A DNA stretch of 62,919 nucleotides, filler included, from Bigelowiella natans CCMP2755 (Eukaryota; Protista; Cercozoa): the NCBI GenBank assembly GCA_000320545.1. It is 7 parts of 7 records of this genome, joined end to end, with 100 filler letters (N's around TTAATTAATTAA, not from the genome) between each part and the next. Parts side by side here need not be neighbours in the genome. Positions count along the whole stretch, not along the records: positions 38,025 to 45,701 come from ADNK01002357.1; 6 more parts are not named here. One strand, 5' to 3'. This document shows, piece by piece, positions 38,025 through 45,476 of this stretch; the stretch's first letter is position 1; each line of letters starts with the position of its first letter. Position numbers and translations under genes: made by a program. Below the pieces are notes generated by a model, which was not told the DNA's origin, did not search any database, and was given only the letters and a program-made list of their open reading frames with translations.

Positions 38025-38139
38025 GGGCACGATGGACAACACACACATAATTCCACATAGCTATAGGCGCATAGCATAGGAGAAGGAAATGGTGGGAGAA
38101 ATCACTAAAATGTGTGCGTGTTCTCGCGTGCTGATGCGA

Positions 38140-38334
38140 GTATTACTCCGCGCCGTTGGGGGGGGTGACTATGAGGAGCTTCTCCACACGCTTCTGCACG
38201 GCCTTCAGCTTGTTTTTCTCCTGAAAGAAGAAGATGAAGAAGAAGATGATGATGATGGTTGGCATTATGGTAGAGCGGGTGAATTATCGAAGAAGGGAGG
38301 ACTTTATGGATATGAATAAATAAATAAATAAATA

Positions 38335-38378
<44 letters not shown>

Positions 38379-38929
38379 CGAGATCTAAATCTCATAATTA
38401 TAACGAGGCCGGGCCGACCGAGAGGTTGAGGCGCGGCTGCATCCTCTGCGCGGCCTTCTTTGCCACCTCCATGTTAGCGAAGGAGAAGAGGAGGAAGCAT
38501 TGAGTCAGGACCGTGCGGCGGAAGTTGGCGTCCTGTCGGAATTTACGGCATGAAGTGGTTGTGATAGGAGGATGGGGGGGGGGGGGAGGAGTTAAACACA
38601 GCAGCAGCAGCGGCAGCAACAACGATGTGTTCCAAAGACTCTCCGCTCTCTGTGTAATGTAGGGAGACGGCCGGCAGCAAAACAAGTGTTGTTTGTTGAT
38701 GCCTCTATGACCCAAAACCATTATACCACCCCTCCTTCTCCCCTCTGCTGCTGCGCCGCATCGGGGATGTGCCCCCCCCCCCCCACCCCCAGCCGCCCAG
38801 CCGCCCAGCCGCCCGCCCACCTCCAGCTGCAGGCTGAGGAGTCGGATCCCGGTGAGGAACTTGGGGTAATAGGTGTCGGGCTCTGAGGCACTCTCGGCCA
38901 CGTGCTCAACCTGGGGAAAATGGTGATGG

Positions 38930-38961
<32 letters not shown>

Positions 38962-39576
38962 GTGATGATGGTGATGATGAAGGTGAGAGTGTATGGCGGT
39001 GATGGTGGCCCGGGGGAAGGGGGGAGGGGTGGAAGAAGATGTAAGAATCCCGATTGGTGCTTGAGGGCGATGATGATGATGATGATGATGATAGTGGTGG
39101 TGGTGATGGTGATACAAGCAGGCAAAAGCAGAAGAAGAAGCAGAAGGCAAAAGAGAGAGAGAGGCCAACAAAAAACAACCTTGGACCCCTCGAAAACTTC
39201 CAAGAGGGCGCTCAGAGTCTGCACAAACTCGTCGCACTTGTCGGTGAGCGTGGCCGGGTTTTGAAAGAACTGCTGCAAGTTCCATACCGACTTGTAGAAA
39301 GCGTAATCGACGCCGCCCCCCTCCTCGTCATCCTCCTTCTTCTCGTCGCCCTTCGCCTCTACCTCCATCATGCTGCTCTCTCCCCCTTCTTGGAGGATAT
39401 GGTAAACAACATTCGTTGGTTGTGTGAGGATGTGTGTGTGTGTGTGTGTGTGTGTGATGTAGCAAGTCCAACAATACGTACCAGGAGGAGGAGGGGAGGA
39501 GGAGATGGTGGTGGTAGTGGTGGTGGGAGGGGGGAAGAAATGGTTTTGCACACCGACACACACAAAGTATAATATA

Positions 39577-39616
<40 letters not shown>

Positions 39617-39709
39617 ATATGACCCTGCGTGTGTGTGTACATGTGTTGTCGGCAACTATCATCGCCATCACGATCATCGTTATGCTGCCCCACCATCACC
39701 ATTGTCACT

Positions 39710-39740
<31 letters not shown>

Positions 39741-39924
39741 CTTAACTTACCAGCCTTGGAGGAGCCTCCTTTGCTACTACCTTCGTTGCTGCTGCTGTCG
39801 TCCGGCTGAATAGACGTGTTATTGTTTGGATTGAATGCCCCGGAGATGTTCAGACCACTCGGCTCGCTCAGCGGCAACGACTTCGCGAGAAGCAAAGATA
39901 CCTATAATCGTAGCACTGCTTTAG

Positions 39925-39961
<37 letters not shown>

Positions 39962-41442
39962 TGGTGACTCGAATCGCCTTGACAGCTCAAATCTTGCAGT
40001 TACCCATTTCACGATAGCAAAGCTGCCACTTCAATTGACCCCCCCTCCCCCCCTCCTCCCCATCCCTCTTCGTGTTGTTTGAATTTCAAATGAGTAAGAG
40101 GGAAAATCCCGGAGGCATGCCCTAGCTTCTCCATGAAGGCGCGATTTCGGAACGTTCGGAATGAATTTATTGGCGAAGCTGGCAATCTACTGGAAGATAA
40201 ACCGACCTGTCCGCAAAAAGCCGTGTTCGTAGTCTTCGACAGCCGATTCTTCAGCATATTGCAGATCTTGAGCAAAGCTGATCATCAGAAGAAGTATATC
40301 CGTCAGGAAAGGAGAACACGTCCACACGTCCTCACCCAGTGGAGTCAATGGATGCAAGCAACAACTGTTCATTGGCCCTGTGTGTATGATCATGCAGCTG
40401 CTAATTACTATGGTCGATGGCTCTACCGAATTTGGTGCGTGTGACGAATAGCGAAGGCGACTTAATGACAAGCTGCAGGTTTCTCTCCACAAACGGGAAG
40501 ATCCTTTCACAGCCCTTGATGGTTTGGCAGTCGAGGATGTCTTCCAGGAACCTCACAACCTGCGTTGCGTGAGTGCGAGTGATGTCGCCATTTGAAAAAC
40601 GCCGGGGGGGGGATAGAAGGAATGGGGGAGGAGTGCGGGGGGGTGGAGGGGGGAGAGCAGCACGTGCGGACTGTGATCAATGTTGAAACAGCAGTTCGTG
40701 CATACCGCGGCCTCGTCGAGGAGTTTGTGCTCAGAGCACCAACGGCCGAGGGAGATGAGCTTTTCAACCACTGGGGTTTCAATTGATCCACCACCGGCGG
40801 ATCTTATCTGGCCCTATGATGAGTGGAGGTTGGGGTTTATATCAGCTGAGAATGCCTCTCCAGCGTGCACACTCGCAAGGGCAACACGGCGAACTCCCTT
40901 ATTCATTCCTCAGGTTGGGGAAATGTACCTCAAGGACTTCGCGGAAGGCAAGCTCGAGAAGTGGTCTGTTTGTGACGGGGCCGGGGGGGGGGGGGGTTGA
41001 CGGGGGATGTCAGAAGCGATACGTTCAATGCATGAGTCCGATTCGCCACCAATAACTTTTTGATGACTACACATAGCCAGCATAATTTTCTTACTTATCA
41101 TGGACTTCTCCATCTCCCAGAGTGGCCTGAAAATAATAGAGCATGCGTTGATGACATCGCTTCAAAAAGAAGGCTAAGTTCGTCACACTCACCGTGAGAG
41201 CCTTCTGGAACTGCTCAGCAGTTTGAGTGCTCCTCACCGCATTCTCCACTAAACCCTGTATACACACACAGCCAAGCACAAGGCTTTGTCATCTTTGTCT
41301 TTTCGGGGCCCAGTTCGTGAATTGGAACCTTCTGTGTGGCTCTCCTTGTCTCAAAGGACGTGGAAGACGCCGTGGCCGCCATTCTGAAGGTGCGTTGAGT
41401 TCGGGCCAGTGATTTCGATCTTGCGACAAGAGTACGGACCAT
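38140..41442 (-). CDS. THOC1: THO complex subunit 1 (3' truncated)
   Basis: LKICNMLKNRLSKTTNTAFCGQV|..LLAKSLPLSEPSGLNISGAFNPNN; FYKSVWNLQQFFQNP; YYPKFLTGIRLLSLQLE|DANFRRTVLTQCFLLF; TPPNG. Confidence 0.9.
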
Positions 41443-42838: not shown

Positions 42839-43532
42839 GACGGCGACTTAGACAAACATATTCGTTCTATCGTATCGCGCTGTGCATGTGGCGATCTAAC
42901 TGATGATGGATGGGCTTGTGATGAAGTTAAGTGTTACATCATCTGCATTCAAATTTCACAGTATTCAATTGTTACTGTGCATACTTCGGGGAACACTATC
43001 TACATGTGCACATAGGAGCTTAGTCACTTCGCACTAGCTAGAAAAGGGAACTGCGGGCTTTGAGGATGATATAAATTTCTTTCAACAACGCATTTCACAA
43101 AAACGTCGACTGTGGACATAAGCTAGTACACATTGTTCTTGTTAGATATGTTGGGCGTAATGACATGTCTGTTGATGATTTAAGTTCCAGCAGCATGCAA
43201 TGCTTAAAAAATGTATGTTATTAGACAAGGTAACTGCTAGCTAGCCAGCAAGTCGTAGTCACACTTTTTGTTGCTCCTCATGCAGTGGCTATACGTACTG
43301 TGTAAGTTTCGCTTGAATGTTACCACTGCATCATCATGTGCACATGTCACCATCGATGGTTATAGAACGCGTGCATATGCATTGGTATTTTGTAGAAAAT
43401 CGTCGTCTGTAGTTTCGGACAAGCTCCAGCGGAAATATATAAATGGCAACTAGCAGACATTGCATGGTCAACAATTAATGACAGCACGACTGTATCGTGT
43501 GCTACGGATTTATTATTTGTAAACGTGCATAG

Positions 43533-43603
43533 GTATTGACTCAACTCTTAAGCATTTCTCTGCTTAGACTTTACGCGTTAGAGCTTCATATTATTCCAAG
43601 TAC
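43533..43603 (-). promoter_or_regulatory. Type II SECIS element in the MGMT 3' UTR
   Basis: mRNA sense: GUACUUGG-aauaau-AUGAA-GCUCUAACGCGU-AAA-g-UCU-aagc-AGA-gaa-AUGCUUAAGAGU-UGAG-UCAAUAC. It has the UGAN/NGAN core, a 12-bp helix II (2 mismatches), apical AAA, a ministem and helix I. Confidence 0.8.
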
Positions 43604-43654
43604 GCTTACCATAACTAATATAATCTCTTCAAATGTAATTTCCCATATCTGAAT

Positions 43655-44128
43655 TTACTTCTTTTCAAGTATCTGGAAGTATTTGGAAAGCCTTTTTTGG
43701 CGTTTGGCGGGTTGTTTTCTTTTCTCACTCTCTTCATTGTCTATCAAAAAGCTATGCATGCACTCTAAGAGTACACGCCCATGCGGATCGATTAGCACGC
43801 CTTCGCCCTCCAAGAGTTTCCTTTTCTTGATAACTTTTGGTTTGCCAGCGCCCCACTCCCCCGAAAATCCTCCCAGACTCCGATCCGATGATATGATACG
43901 ATGTCACGGAACCTCGGGGAAGTAAGGGTTATTTCGCATTGCCTGGCCCACAGCTCTGGCGCATGATTTGGGTTTTAGTGCAGCTGCAATTGAGCCGTAG
44001 GTGGCGACCTTGCCCTTTGGGATGGTTTTGACGAGCGCGTACACACGTCTTTGAAAATCGGTGGGATCTTTCTTCTTCTTCTTTTCACCACCCTCCTCGG
44101 GAGACTTTCGCTTCTTCCTCCCCGACAT
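43655..44128 (-). CDS. MGMT: O6-methylguanine-DNA methyltransferase (Ogt/MGMT C-terminal domain), predicted selenoprotein with U at the catalytic site, NLS and PIP box; 157 aa, intronless
   Basis: TDFQRRVYALVKTIPKGKVATYGSIAAAL..SCARAVGQAMRNNPYFPEVP[TGA]HRIISSDRSLGGFSGEWG..KKRKLLEGEG...QKRLSKYFQILEKK-TAA. Confidence 0.9.
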
Positions 44129-44767
44129 GGTGCCTCCCCCACGTCCGTGATGACGACGGATTTTGCGGGAAGAGCTTCCCACTGATTGAGTGCTTTTTCC
44201 CACCGGGTTTTCCAAGAATTCACATGCGATTTTCGCCGTGCGTCACGTGTATCGGCACAAACTAGGAACGGAATTCCGCTGTTGTCGCTGCTGTTCTGGG
44301 CTTTGGCTGACCACCTTTTTCACTATGATGTTCTTGGCTGAAAATGCGATCAGTTCGGCGGGAGGAAGAGCTAGGTTTCCGGCCTCCAATTGTAAAATAT
44401 AATTATTAGATGTTTTCGGTGTATATTTTTGTCTAAGTGGTCTATCAAACCGACAGGTCTGCAACAAGAGTAGATCATCGTTAAGCCCCCGAGCCGACCC
44501 TCCCCAGCCATCCTCTTCTTAGTTCCTGGTGCGTGCAAAAAGGGCCTACTAGCGTCGTAGGGAGTGTGTTCCTGGCGTTTGGAGTGGTACGGCGTCGCCG
44601 GGGAGCTACCCAGCGTGAGAGCATCAATCGCCGACGGTGCGCGACGTCTCAGCCCCGGGGTAGGAGTCGTGTGTGGGGTCGGCAGCTAATGTAAGCTTTG
44701 TCCGAACTTAGTGAGACTTCTTCGATCTTTGTTTCGCGTTGCTACGAATGGATAGATGAGCACTAGC

Positions 44768-44805
<38 letters not shown>

Positions 44806-44949
44806 ATCCTTTCGTCCACCTCCCACACGTTGTGTTAGATGGGCGGAGCACGATGGCAACGACGGCTGTTGACGATAGCCTTTTTGATGGGGGGGCCTTT
44901 CCGCCCCTATGCTTCCTCCTCATCTCGCTACTCTCCTCCTTCTTCCCCA

Positions 44950-45412
44950 ATATGGTTTGGGGAGGCGTCTTCCTTCATCAAGCCCGAACACGTGGAGGAG
45001 CTAATGCAGGTTGCTTCTTAGGCCTTAAGCCTTCACACAGACGCACGCGAGCGAAAGCTATTCCACTCGACTTCGCACGCCCTCGTATTTACGCGTGCAC
45101 GCATGTCGTACATAGGCAGCAACATCAAGGATGGAGTCTTCTAAGATGTTCGATACCACGTACGCCGCCCTTCCGGCCGCGGCTCTATCATTTCCGCAGC
45201 ATAGCGAATGAATAATAATCACGCCGAGAGAGAGATATAGGGAGAGGGAGGAAGGGACGACGGGAAAGAGGGGGAGAGAAGGTTCAGAGCGAGAGAAAGT
45301 GAATAGAGGCCTTTCGACGGATTCGTCAATGCACTTAGTACTTATCGCCATCTTCGCCGTTGTATATAGCGGTACCTGCTTTACACGAAAGTTATCTTAG
45401 CAGCTTCGACTT

Positions 45413-45476
<64 letters not shown>

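What the first reader, a model, noticed from the sequence alone, without database searches (positions are those of the whole stretch)
43533..44128. Selenocysteine-containing MGMT DNA-repair enzyme (PCHR to PUHR) with a SECIS element
Seen: the ORF track stops at 43904, but that TGA sits exactly at the catalytic Cys of the invariant PCHR motif (NPYFPEVP-TGA-HRIISSDRSLGGF). The frame continues for 82 more codons, with intact family motifs (LGGF, KRKLLEGEG), to TAA at 43655. A canonical SECIS fold follows about 50 nt later. Established: Sec replaces catalytic Cys via UGA plus a 3'-UTR SECIS, and MGMT is a stoichiometric suicide alkyl acceptor. Inference: this alga spends one Sec per repaired lesion, forming Se-alkyl-Sec; this could mean faster or broader dealkylation, a regenerable site, or Se-dependent control of DNA repair. 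I recall Sec forms of this family being predicted in a few bacteria and algae, so novelty for this lineage needs checking. Standard annotation would call the gene truncated or a pseudogene.
Basis: partly seen in the sequence, partly recalled or inferred. Interest (0 to 1): 0.95.

Follow-up and report, generated by a model that had tools for sequence, protein, structure and literature searches.

The report
Selenocysteine MGMT DNA-repair gene, known family
This is a real, expressed algal-type gene for a small DNA-alkylation-repair protein whose catalytic cysteine is replaced by selenocysteine (UGA plus a 3'-UTR SECIS hairpin), but this selenoprotein family ("MDP") is already catalogued in algae and prokaryotes.

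Summary
On the minus strand, an ATG (44128) opens a 157-codon frame with one in-frame TGA (43906-43904). Pfam PF01035 matches profile positions 1-51 before the TGA and 53-81 after it, so the TGA sits on the Cys of PCHR. One independent DNA run and three probable RNA runs from three studies reproduce the sequence without a difference. They show one unspliced ~670-nt transcript that includes the 3' UTR. Five other lineages (L001-L006) carry TGA at the same codon. Downstream sequence is under purifying selection (window vs L001: pN 0.22, pS 0.73). The closest Cys homologue has Cys exactly in the one-residue gap. A form-2 SECIS (43609-43519) lies 45 nt after the TAA. Only 9 of 5000 shuffles score 8 or more (the site scores 9), and L001 has the same architecture. 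About 25 of the 150 best relative clusters end at this Pro. It is not new: Sec-MGMT is listed for prokaryotes (2007-2008) and as algal family "MDP" (Jiang 2020), and engineered human AGT C145U is active. In passing: some relatives are MGMT-DUF3253 fusions with a second TGA on DUF3253's conserved Cys.

The parts
43480..44155 (-). Mono-exonic mRNA of about 670 nt (5' end about 44151-44155, 3' end about 43480-43494)
   Evidence: one contig in each of RNA runs X15, X17 and X18 (three studies). There are 0 differences and no joints, and the flanks are silent (43156-43475 and 44180-44435). X15's contig runs into adapter-like letters at 44153.
43907..44128 (-). CDS part 1, 74 codons: a basic NLS-like N-terminus (residues 1-23), then MGMT domain positions 1-51, ending ...NNPYFPEVP
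   Evidence: PF01035 E 1.3e-16. TIGR00589 scores 47.3 bits against a cutoff of 46.4.
43904..43906 (-). In-frame TGA at the catalytic Cys position of PCHR; inferred selenocysteine codon (residue 75)
   Evidence: the N piece aligns to P0012 residues 40-98, the C piece to 100-116, and residue 99 of P0012 is Cys. TGA is at the same codon in L001-L006.
43658..43903 (-). CDS part 2, 82 codons: HRIISSDRSLGGFSGEWG...KKRKLLEGEG (MGMT domain positions 53-81), then a Lys-rich tail
   Evidence: PF01035 53-81, E 0.005; window vs L001 pN 0.22, pS 0.73. The other two frames each hold 4 stops.
43655..43657 (-). True stop codon, TAA
43519..43609 (-). Form-2 SECIS element. Helix I is 43609-43596 paired with 43532-43519. 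AUGA is at 43589-43586. Helix II is 43585-43573 paired with 43555-43543 (13 positions, 11 pairs). The apical part is 43572-43556: unpaired AAA, a UCU/AGA mini-stem and a 4-nt loop. The GA partner is at 43542-43541.
   Evidence: It is the only hit on the minus strand of the 7.7-kb piece. 9 of 5000 UTR shuffles score 8 or more; the real site scores 9. L001 has the same architecture, and Rfam SECIS_1 aligns there full-length at 18.1 bits.
43509..43514 (-). AAUAAA poly(A) signal, 15-30 nt upstream of the RNA contig ends

Best explanation
The locus is an expressed, intron-less nuclear gene for a 157-residue single-domain O6-alkylguanine-DNA alkyltransferase (MGMT/AGT, Pfam PF01035). It belongs to the algal selenoprotein family called MDP. 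The codon for the alkyl-accepting active-site residue is UGA instead of a Cys codon. A form-2 SECIS hairpin in the 3' UTR directs the ribosome to insert selenocysteine there, giving a P-U-H-R active site (inferred). The other active-site residues keep the spacing of human AGT: Tyr at -31, the Arg finger at -17 and the Asn hinge at -8 relative to the acceptor. The Glu of the LL..EG motif also follows; its offset differs because of a short insertion. The basic N- and C-terminal tails look like nuclear localisation signals. The inferred mechanism is as follows. The protein flips out O6-alkylguanine, and the selenolate, which is already deprotonated at physiological pH, takes the alkyl group in a single-turnover reaction. 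This leaves Se-alkyl-selenocysteine, so one Sec is spent per lesion. Likely advantages of Sec are that it does not depend on the thiol-activating network and that it resists irreversible oxidative inactivation. Shown here: the TGA, its transcription, its conservation, the coding constraint after it, and the SECIS architecture. Inferred: actual Sec insertion, alkyl-transfer activity, and the advantage of Sec.
For: Both halves match one PF01035 profile with exactly one position skipped. The TGA is confirmed in DNA and in RNA contigs of three studies, in an unspliced transcript that contains the SECIS and a poly(A) signal. TGA sits at the same codon in L001, L002-L004, L005 and L006, which differ widely in GC content (41-64% where measured), and conserved in-frame motifs follow it. 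After the TGA, pS is 0.73-0.83 against pN 0.21-0.31, the same regime as upstream. The closest full-length Cys homologue, P0012, has Cys in the one-residue gap. The SECIS architecture is significant against shuffles in the window (9/5000) and in L001 (5/5000), and Rfam SECIS_1 aligns full-length at the L001 site (18.1 bits, E 0.43). In all five lineages Trp is always TGG (10 codons), ordinary Cys is TGC or TGT, TGA occurs only at catalytic-Cys-aligned positions, and complete genes end in TAA or TAG. About 25 of the 150 best representative clusters end at this Pro. Literature: MDP is a listed algal selenoprotein family (PMC7539508), a prokaryotic Sec form is known, and engineered human AGT C145U protects E. 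coli from MNNG and stays active with N137A, which kills the Cys enzyme (PMC4150793).
Against: Rfam's SECIS models give no hit on the window's element, even in a 181-nt search. The unconstrained MFE fold of the UTR is unremarkable (z = -0.33), so the SECIS call rests on my own pattern scanner, its controls and comparison with L001. The Sec machinery (tRNA-Sec, eEFSec, SBP2, SecS, PSTK, SPS) could not be checked: only 7.7 kb is available and it holds no tRNA. There is no protein-level evidence. The protein lacks the N-terminal domain of canonical AGTs, as do all ten longer Cys-form relatives that I scanned. Alkyl-transfer activity of this single-domain subfamily is therefore assumed, not shown. 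The RNA status of runs X15-X19 is the tool's guess, although the silent flanks support it.
Confidence: 0.85

Rival explanations
1. The gene makes a genuine selenoprotein, but it is not a suicide alkyltransferase. As a single-domain protein it would act like the alkyltransferase-like (ATL) damage sensors, or it would have a redox or other role, with Sec serving something other than alkyl acceptance.
For: There is no AGT N-terminal domain. The N piece matches the single-domain proteins Atl1 (3gva, E 4.5e-6) and 2kif (E 9.5e-6) almost as well as true AGTs. Most known selenoproteins are oxidoreductases (PMC2398784).
Against: ATLs are defined by loss of the nucleophile (Trp or Ala in place of Cys). 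Here the position holds the strongest biological nucleophile, and the closest relatives have Cys. The Tyr, Arg-finger and Asn-hinge residues keep human-AGT spacing and the Glu motif follows (sequence). Human AGT with Sec is an active alkyltransferase (PMC4150793).
Confidence: 0.08
2. The UGA is decoded by something other than Sec. It could be read as Trp, which would give the ATL motif PWHR, or as Cys or Arg, through codon reassignment or SECIS-independent read-through.
For: UGA-to-Trp and UGA-to-Cys reassignments exist in some protists (my own knowledge). None of the complete genes examined uses TGA as its terminator. Rfam does not recognise the window's SECIS.
Against: All 10 Trp codons are TGG and ordinary Cys residues use TGC or TGT. 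TGA appears only at positions aligned with catalytic or conserved Cys, in two unrelated domains (PCHR, and CPSE of DUF3253). A significant SECIS architecture sits in the 3' UTR of the window and of L001. The pattern recurs in lineages of very different base composition.
Confidence: 0.04
3. The TGA is a real stop. The gene would be truncated or a pseudogene, or would make a 74-residue fragment, and everything downstream would be 3' UTR.
For: This is how automatic gene callers read it (the ORF ends at 43904; database proteins P0001-P0003 are truncated).
Against: The same TGA is kept in at least five divergent lineages. The downstream frame stays open for 78-112 further codons or more, under strong purifying selection, and completes the Pfam domain. 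A 74-residue product would lack the acceptor residue and the C-terminal helix of the fold.
Confidence: 0.03

Closest known systems
[quoted passage not shown] 2020, 'The algal selenoproteomes', PMC7539508)
   Same: A eukaryotic algal PF01035 protein with Sec in place of the active-site Cys, recoded through a 3'-UTR SECIS, with Cys-form homologues in other species. This is the family I file the gene under.
   Different: I could not check whether this particular gene or species is in their database. The organism is masked, and their figures and the SPDB website are not readable here. The paper gives no biochemical characterisation.
Prokaryotic Sec-containing methylated-DNA-protein-cysteine methyltransferase (Carboxydothermus hydrogenoformans ABB14497.1; Olavius symbiont and GOS metagenomes; PMC1976440, PMC2398784, PMC13188914)
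   Same: The same Pfam family (PF01035) and the same Cys-to-Sec substitution.
   Different: Bacterial recoding uses a SECIS hairpin immediately downstream of the UGA, inside the coding region, and SelB. Here the SECIS is a eukaryotic-type kink-turn element in the 3' UTR, about 310 nt from the UGA.
Human MGMT/AGT and its engineered C145U variant (PMC4150793)
   Same: The catalytic domain, with Tyr, Arg finger and Asn hinge at the same spacing from the acceptor, and the Glu motif after it. The engineered Sec enzyme repairs O6-methylguanine in vivo, which shows the chemistry works.
   Different: Human AGT has an extra N-terminal zinc-binding domain and naturally uses Cys. The window protein is the catalytic domain alone, with basic tails and a roughly 7-residue insertion before the LL..EG motif.
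Alkyltransferase-like proteins (ATL: S. pombe Atl1, PDB 3gva; E. coli YbaZ; Vibrio ATL 2kif)
   Same: Single-domain architecture of about 100-150 residues. The N piece matches them at E around 1e-5 to 1e-6.
   Different: ATLs have lost the nucleophile (PWHR or PAHR) and only bind the damage. This protein and its closest relatives keep a nucleophile (Sec or Cys).

Membership tests
MGMT/AGT alkyltransferase (Pfam PF01035, TIGR00589) | Significant match to the catalytic/DNA-binding domain profile across the active site | tested here: met
   profile positions 1-51 (E 1.3e-16) and 53-81 (E 0.005), contiguous in one frame. TIGR00589 scores 47.3 bits against a cutoff of 46.4 on the N piece alone.
MGMT/AGT alkyltransferase (Pfam PF01035, TIGR00589) | P-C-H-R motif with a nucleophilic alkyl acceptor | tested here: inconclusive
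   The sequence reads P-[TGA]-H-R. The acceptor is present only if UGA is read as Sec. That is strongly indicated but not shown at protein level.
MGMT/AGT alkyltransferase (Pfam PF01035, TIGR00589) | Supporting active-site residues: Tyr (-31), Arg finger (-17) and Asn hinge (-8) relative to the acceptor, and the Glu of the LL..EG motif after it | tested here: met
   Read directly from the translation: Y44, R58, N67 and U75, then E109 in LLEGEG. The human AGT numbering (Y114, R128, N137, C145, E172) comes from my own knowledge plus PMC4150793.
MGMT/AGT alkyltransferase (Pfam PF01035, TIGR00589) | N-terminal AGT domain (PF02870), typical of canonical Ogt/Ada-C/MGMT | tested here: not met
   Only 23 basic residues precede the domain, and there is no other Pfam hit. 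The ten longer Cys-form relatives scanned also lack it. The gene therefore belongs to a single-domain subfamily.
MGMT/AGT alkyltransferase (Pfam PF01035, TIGR00589) | Stoichiometric alkyl transfer from O6-alkylguanine | not testable with these tools
   Needs a biochemical assay.
Eukaryotic selenoprotein (algal MDP family) | In-frame UGA aligned with Cys in homologues (a Sec/Cys pair) | tested here: met
   (P0012 residue 99 is Cys). 122 of the 158 proteins held, nearly all of them from the best 150 clusters, read PCHR.
Eukaryotic selenoprotein (algal MDP family) | UGA and the downstream coding sequence conserved in orthologues | tested here: met
   L001-L006; after the TGA, pN 0.21-0.31 against pS 0.73-0.83.
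Eukaryotic selenoprotein (algal MDP family) | SECIS element (AUGA, helix II of about 12 bp, unpaired AA, GA partner) in the 3' UTR of the mRNA | tested here: met
   My own scanner with shuffles and a constrained fold. The element lies inside the transcribed region. L001 has the same form-2 architecture.
Eukaryotic selenoprotein (algal MDP family) | Recognition by the curated SECIS covariance model (Rfam RF00031) | tested here: not met
   No hit for the window at E up to 10. The L001 orthologue's element scores 18.1 bits against a gathering score of 35. SECISearch3 is not available here.
Eukaryotic selenoprotein (algal MDP family) | The genome encodes tRNA-Sec, eEFSec, SBP2, SecS, PSTK and SPS | not testable with these tools
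   Only 7.7 kb of the genome is available, and it holds no tRNA.
Alkyltransferase-like (ATL) proteins | Active-site Cys replaced by a non-nucleophile (Trp or Ala) | tested here: not met
   The position is TGA, not TGG. Trp is TGG at all 10 Trp codons of the five lineages. Not filed as an ATL.

The most novel reading that the evidence does not exclude
Natural Sec-MGMT may be more than a like-for-like Cys-to-Sec swap. It may be a selenium-consuming, oxidation-resistant suicide repair module whose capacity is tied to selenium supply in marine protists. In sister lineages (L003, L004, L006) the same gene is fused to a DUF3253 domain whose single conserved Cys (CPSE) is also encoded by TGA. That marks DUF3253, a family with no known function, as carrying a second catalytic nucleophile. 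It could be a second alkyl acceptor for another lesion, by analogy with the two acceptor sites of Ada. The window gene would then be the minimal, one-Sec version of this system.
Probability: 0.2. Interest if true: 0.65.

Novelty: already known. Interest (0 to 1): 0.3.

Why it matters
As a discovery it adds little. Sec-containing MGMT is already on the lists of prokaryotic selenoproteins (2007-2008) and algal ones (2020, family MDP). Its value is practical and confirmatory. It is a clean, fully documented example, covering transcript, UGA, Sec/Cys pair, SECIS and purifying selection. Standard gene callers truncate this gene at residue 74, and the same mis-annotation affects about one in six of its closest relative clusters in public protein databases. 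I found no paper on the biochemistry of a natural Sec-MGMT. A suicide enzyme that spends one selenocysteine per repaired base is an unusual use of a costly residue. It would link alkylation-damage tolerance to selenium availability in marine phytoplankton, which is easy to test in culture. The side observation gives a concrete functional lead for an uncharacterised domain family: a second Sec on the conserved Cys of a fused DUF3253 domain.

Tried and rejected
1. Rfam SECIS models gave no hit on the window, either in the 7.7-kb piece or in a 181-nt stretch. The miRNA-family hits lie in simple TA/GA repeats and are not meaningful.
2. The unconstrained MFE fold of the UTR is not distinctive (z = -0.33). 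SECIS cores use non-Watson-Crick pairs, so I switched to a pattern scanner and a constrained fold.
3. A second SECIS-like hit on the + strand (40579-40632, score 7) lies in G-rich low-complexity sequence. It is at chance level (0.7 expected per piece), and the nearby ORFs have no Pfam match. Rejected.
4. Sequencing error is rejected by the reads. An intron or splicing artefact is rejected because the RNA contigs show no joints.
5. A general UGA reassignment is rejected by codon usage.
7. The organism's identity is masked: run names are coded, and window proteins are shown without source. I could not check whether this species' MDP gene is already listed, nor cite its Sec machinery.
8. The Aureococcus selenoproteome papers (PMC3695291, PMC3060233), which probably hold the first eukaryotic report, are not held. 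The 2007 Ostreococcus/Thalassiosira 'methyltransferase' selenoprotein is described for Thalassiosira as a predicted SAM-dependent enzyme, a different family.
9. No DNA was available for P0001 (MMETSP), P0013 or P0034.
10. The word-index search with the DUF3253 piece found nothing. A genome-contig scan replaced it.
11. The full read-through protein was not folded or searched as one chain, because the tools do not accept it. The two pieces were searched apart.
12. The C piece alone against the PDB gave only spurious antibody and deaminase matches.

Full report
**1. What is in the sequence.**

On the minus strand an ATG at 44128 opens a frame of 74 codons. The frame ends ...NNPYFPEVP and reaches TGA at 43906-43904. 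It then continues for 82 codons (HRIISSDRSLGGFSGEWG...KKRKLLEGEG..., then a Lys-rich tail) to TAA at 43657-43655.

Pfam PF01035, the MGMT catalytic/DNA-binding domain, matches the upstream piece at profile positions 1-51 (E 1.3e-16). It matches the downstream piece at positions 53-81 (E 0.005). The single skipped position is the TGA, which is the Cys of the PCHR motif. NCBIfam TIGR00589 (ogt) passes its cutoff on the upstream piece alone.

**2. The TGA is real and transcribed.**

Twenty public runs hold the stretch or a part of it. I laid four of them on 42900-44800.
- An independent DNA run (X2) covers the region (42900-44754) with no differences.
- Three probable RNA runs from three studies (X15, X17, X18) each give one contig, covering 43480/43484/43494 to 44151/44155/44153.
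- These contigs have no differences and no joints.
- Depth is zero in the flanking DNA (43156-43475 and 44180-44435).

The gene is therefore intron-less. The mRNA is about 670 nt, with a 5' leader of about 25 nt and a 3' UTR of about 160-175 nt. An AAUAAA signal at 43514-43509 lies 15-30 nt before the contig ends.

These are assembled contigs, so the ends are approximate, and the 'RNA' label is the tool's guess. The silent flanks and the neighbouring discrete contigs argue for RNA.

**3. Comparative evidence.**

The word-index search found that the three closest database proteins all end exactly at the Pro before the catalytic position. They are P0001 (an MMETSP transcript, 96% identical), P0002 (72%) and P0003 (54%).

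The DNA of P0002 (L001), of P0003 and its cluster-mates (L002-L004), and of two further truncated relatives (L005 at 64% GC, L006 at 41% GC) shows TGA at that codon every time. Conserved in-frame motifs follow it: HRV..., GGF.GQWG, KRK..LL..EG.

Over the 35 codons after the TGA, synonymous sites are near saturation (pS 0.73-0.83) while non-synonymous change is low (pN 0.21-0.31). For window vs L001 this gives dN/dS of about 0.1. The 30 codons upstream behave the same way. The other two frames contain several stops.

Against the closest full-length Cys homologue (P0012), the N piece aligns to residues 40-98 and the C piece to residues 100-116. Residue 99 is Cys. This is the classical Sec/Cys pair.

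In the exhaustive search of 1.84 billion representatives there are 2276 hits. Among the 158 proteins held, nearly all of them from the best 150 clusters, 122 read PCHR. About 25 of the best 150 clusters end exactly at the Pro. The Sec form is therefore a sizeable environmental clade that gene callers truncate as a matter of routine.

**4. The SECIS.**

Rfam's SECIS models do not detect the window's element, and the unconstrained fold is unremarkable. I therefore wrote a scanner for the eukaryotic SECIS architecture. It looks for [A/G]UGA, a helix II of at least 9 positions with at most 2 mismatches, unpaired AA 9-14 nt after the core, and a GA partner.
- In the window's UTR it finds one hit, with AUGA at 43589-43586, GA at 43542-43541 and a helix II of 13 positions with 11 pairs.
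- In L001's UTR it finds one hit.
- It is the only hit on the minus strand of the whole 7.7-kb piece.
- In dinucleotide shuffles, 9 of 5000 (window UTR) and 5 of 5000 (L001 UTR) score 8 or more. The real sites score 9 and 8.

With the quartet held unpaired, both fold into the same form-2 SECIS:
- an outer helix I (window 43609-43596 with 43532-43519);
- an internal loop carrying AUGA and GA;
- helix II;
- unpaired A's;
- a mini-stem of 3-4 bp with a 4-nt loop.

Rfam SECIS_1 aligns full-length at exactly the L001 site, but below threshold (18.1 bits, E 0.43). L006 has a similar element 64 nt after its true stop, but it lacks the apical AA.

The SECIS call is well supported by architecture, position, controls and one orthologue. 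A curated model does not certify it.

**5. Rivals.**

*A general reassignment of UGA.* If UGA meant Trp, the motif would be PWHR, the signature of the non-catalytic ATL proteins. Codon usage excludes this. In five lineages all 10 Trp codons are TGG, and ordinary Cys residues are TGC or TGT. TGA occurs only at positions aligned with catalytic or conserved Cys, and complete genes end in TAA or TAG.

*Pseudogene, sequencing error, intron.* A pseudogene or truncation is excluded by the conservation, a sequencing error by the reads, and an intron by the absence of joints.

*A non-alkyltransferase selenoprotein.* What remains open is whether this single-domain protein is an active alkyltransferase. 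It has no AGT N-terminal domain, and neither do the ten longer Cys relatives I scanned. The nucleophile is retained, and the active-site residues keep human-AGT spacing: Y44, R58 and N67 against U75, with E109 following in LLEGEG. This argues that it is active.

**6. Mechanism.**

*Shown:* the gene, the mRNA, the UGA at the acceptor codon, the SECIS-type element, and the coding constraint.

*Inferred from established knowledge of AGTs and of Sec recoding:* SBP2 and eEFSec insert Sec at residue 75. The protein, probably nuclear because of its basic tails, flips out O6-alkylguanine. The selenolate takes the alkyl group irreversibly.

Experimental precedent comes from PMC4150793. Human AGT C145U protects E. 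coli lacking ada and ogt from MNNG, and it stays active with N137A, which inactivates the Cys enzyme. Sec therefore removes the need for the thiol-activating environment.

Resistance to irreversible oxidation of a hyper-reactive active site is my favoured explanation for the advantage of Sec in a photosynthetic cell. It is untested.

**7. Comparison with what is known.**

Sec-containing methylated-DNA-protein-cysteine methyltransferase is listed:
- among the selenoproteins of Olavius symbionts (PMC1976440);
- in the GOS metagenome (PMC2398784);
- in a 2026 review, with the Carboxydothermus protein ABB14497.1 as reference (PMC13188914).

For eukaryotes, Jiang et al. [quoted passage not shown] They do not count it among their three new ones (PMC7539508). 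The kind is therefore already known.

I could not determine whether this very gene is in their database, because the organism is masked. A close relative (96% identical) is in MMETSP, and a 2011 DNA run holds the locus. This suggests a well-studied marine alga whose genome was probably surveyed. I found no paper that characterises a natural Sec-MGMT biochemically.

**8. Noticed in passing.**

In L003, L004 and L006 the apparent second stop is again TGA, in the conserved context ...GKTC-TGA-PSEIPR.... The frame continues into a DUF3253 domain (PF11625, from profile position 23; E 7.5e-13 and 1.1e-9). PDB 2ns0 also matches.

Seven bacterial DUF3253 genes all read ...S(T/I)-C-PS(D/E)AAR..., so the TGA falls on their conserved Cys.

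These relatives are therefore MGMT-DUF3253 fusions with two predicted Sec residues. This explains why no SECIS was seen right after the apparent stop in L003 and L004. By the Sec/Cys-pair logic, it also marks the DUF3253 Cys as a functional nucleophile linked to alkylation repair. 'DUF3253' occurs in no paper of the library. The window's gene has no DUF3253 part.

**9. Verdict.**

The locus is a real, expressed Sec-MGMT gene with a 3'-UTR SECIS, and annotation pipelines mis-call it. It belongs to an already described selenoprotein family, so interest is modest (0.3). The open questions are biochemical, and the DUF3253 lead is the most original by-product.

Noticed in passing
L006:1272-2357, L004:230-907, L003:705-1353 (related loci, not the window): These relatives are MGMT-DUF3253 fusion genes with two in-frame TGAs. 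The second (...GKTC-TGA-PSEIPR...) falls exactly on the conserved Cys of the CPS(E/D) motif of DUF3253 (PF11625; PDB 2ns0). It predicts a two-selenocysteine protein and marks that Cys of an uncharacterised domain as a functional nucleophile linked to alkylation repair. No paper in the library mentions DUF3253.
   Followed up: partly
proteins P0001-P0003, P0013, P0021, P0027, P0032-P0034, P0037, P0041, P0052, P0058, P0060, P0077, P0094, P0096, P0097, P0104, P0107, P0114, P0123, P0124, P0139, P0157: About 25 of the 150 best representative clusters related to the window protein end exactly at the Pro before the catalytic residue. Four of these clusters were checked at DNA level, on six loci (L001-L006), and all have TGA there. 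This points to systematic truncation of Sec-MGMT genes in public protein collections. A subgroup has a longer loop with an extra Cys (...NPYGC..MP).
   Followed up: partly
L006:2421-2474: A SECIS-like element lies 64 nt after the true TAG stop of the two-Sec fusion gene. It has AUGA, a 12-position helix II with 11 pairs and a GA partner, but its apical part starts UACC instead of the canonical AA. It could be a variant SECIS serving two UGA codons.
   Followed up: partly
window 40579-40632 (+): A second hit of my SECIS pattern scanner (score 7) in G-rich low-complexity sequence. The score is at chance level (0.7 hits expected per piece), and the surrounding ORFs have no Pfam match. I judge it to be noise.
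   Followed up: yes
window 38100-39820 and 44740-44830, 45230-45470: Long simple repeats (TA, CA/TG and GA runs; His- and Ile-rich pseudo-ORFs) produce spurious Rfam microRNA-family matches (mir-3149, MIR2118 and others) far below their gathering scores.
   Followed up: no
window 42900-43107 and 44463-44690: Two neighbouring transcribed regions flank the gene. At 44690 all three RNA runs continue for 255 letters that do not match the window there, which is consistent with an exon boundary of a spliced neighbour. ORFs of 90 aa or more elsewhere in the piece gave no Pfam match, and these two regions were not searched.
   Followed up: no
L001:408-2444 (-): The neighbour of the L001 orthologue is a UBA/PUB-domain protein. 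'PUB domain-containing protein' is itself listed as an algal selenoprotein family in PMC7539508. I did not check whether this copy has a Sec codon.
   Followed up: no
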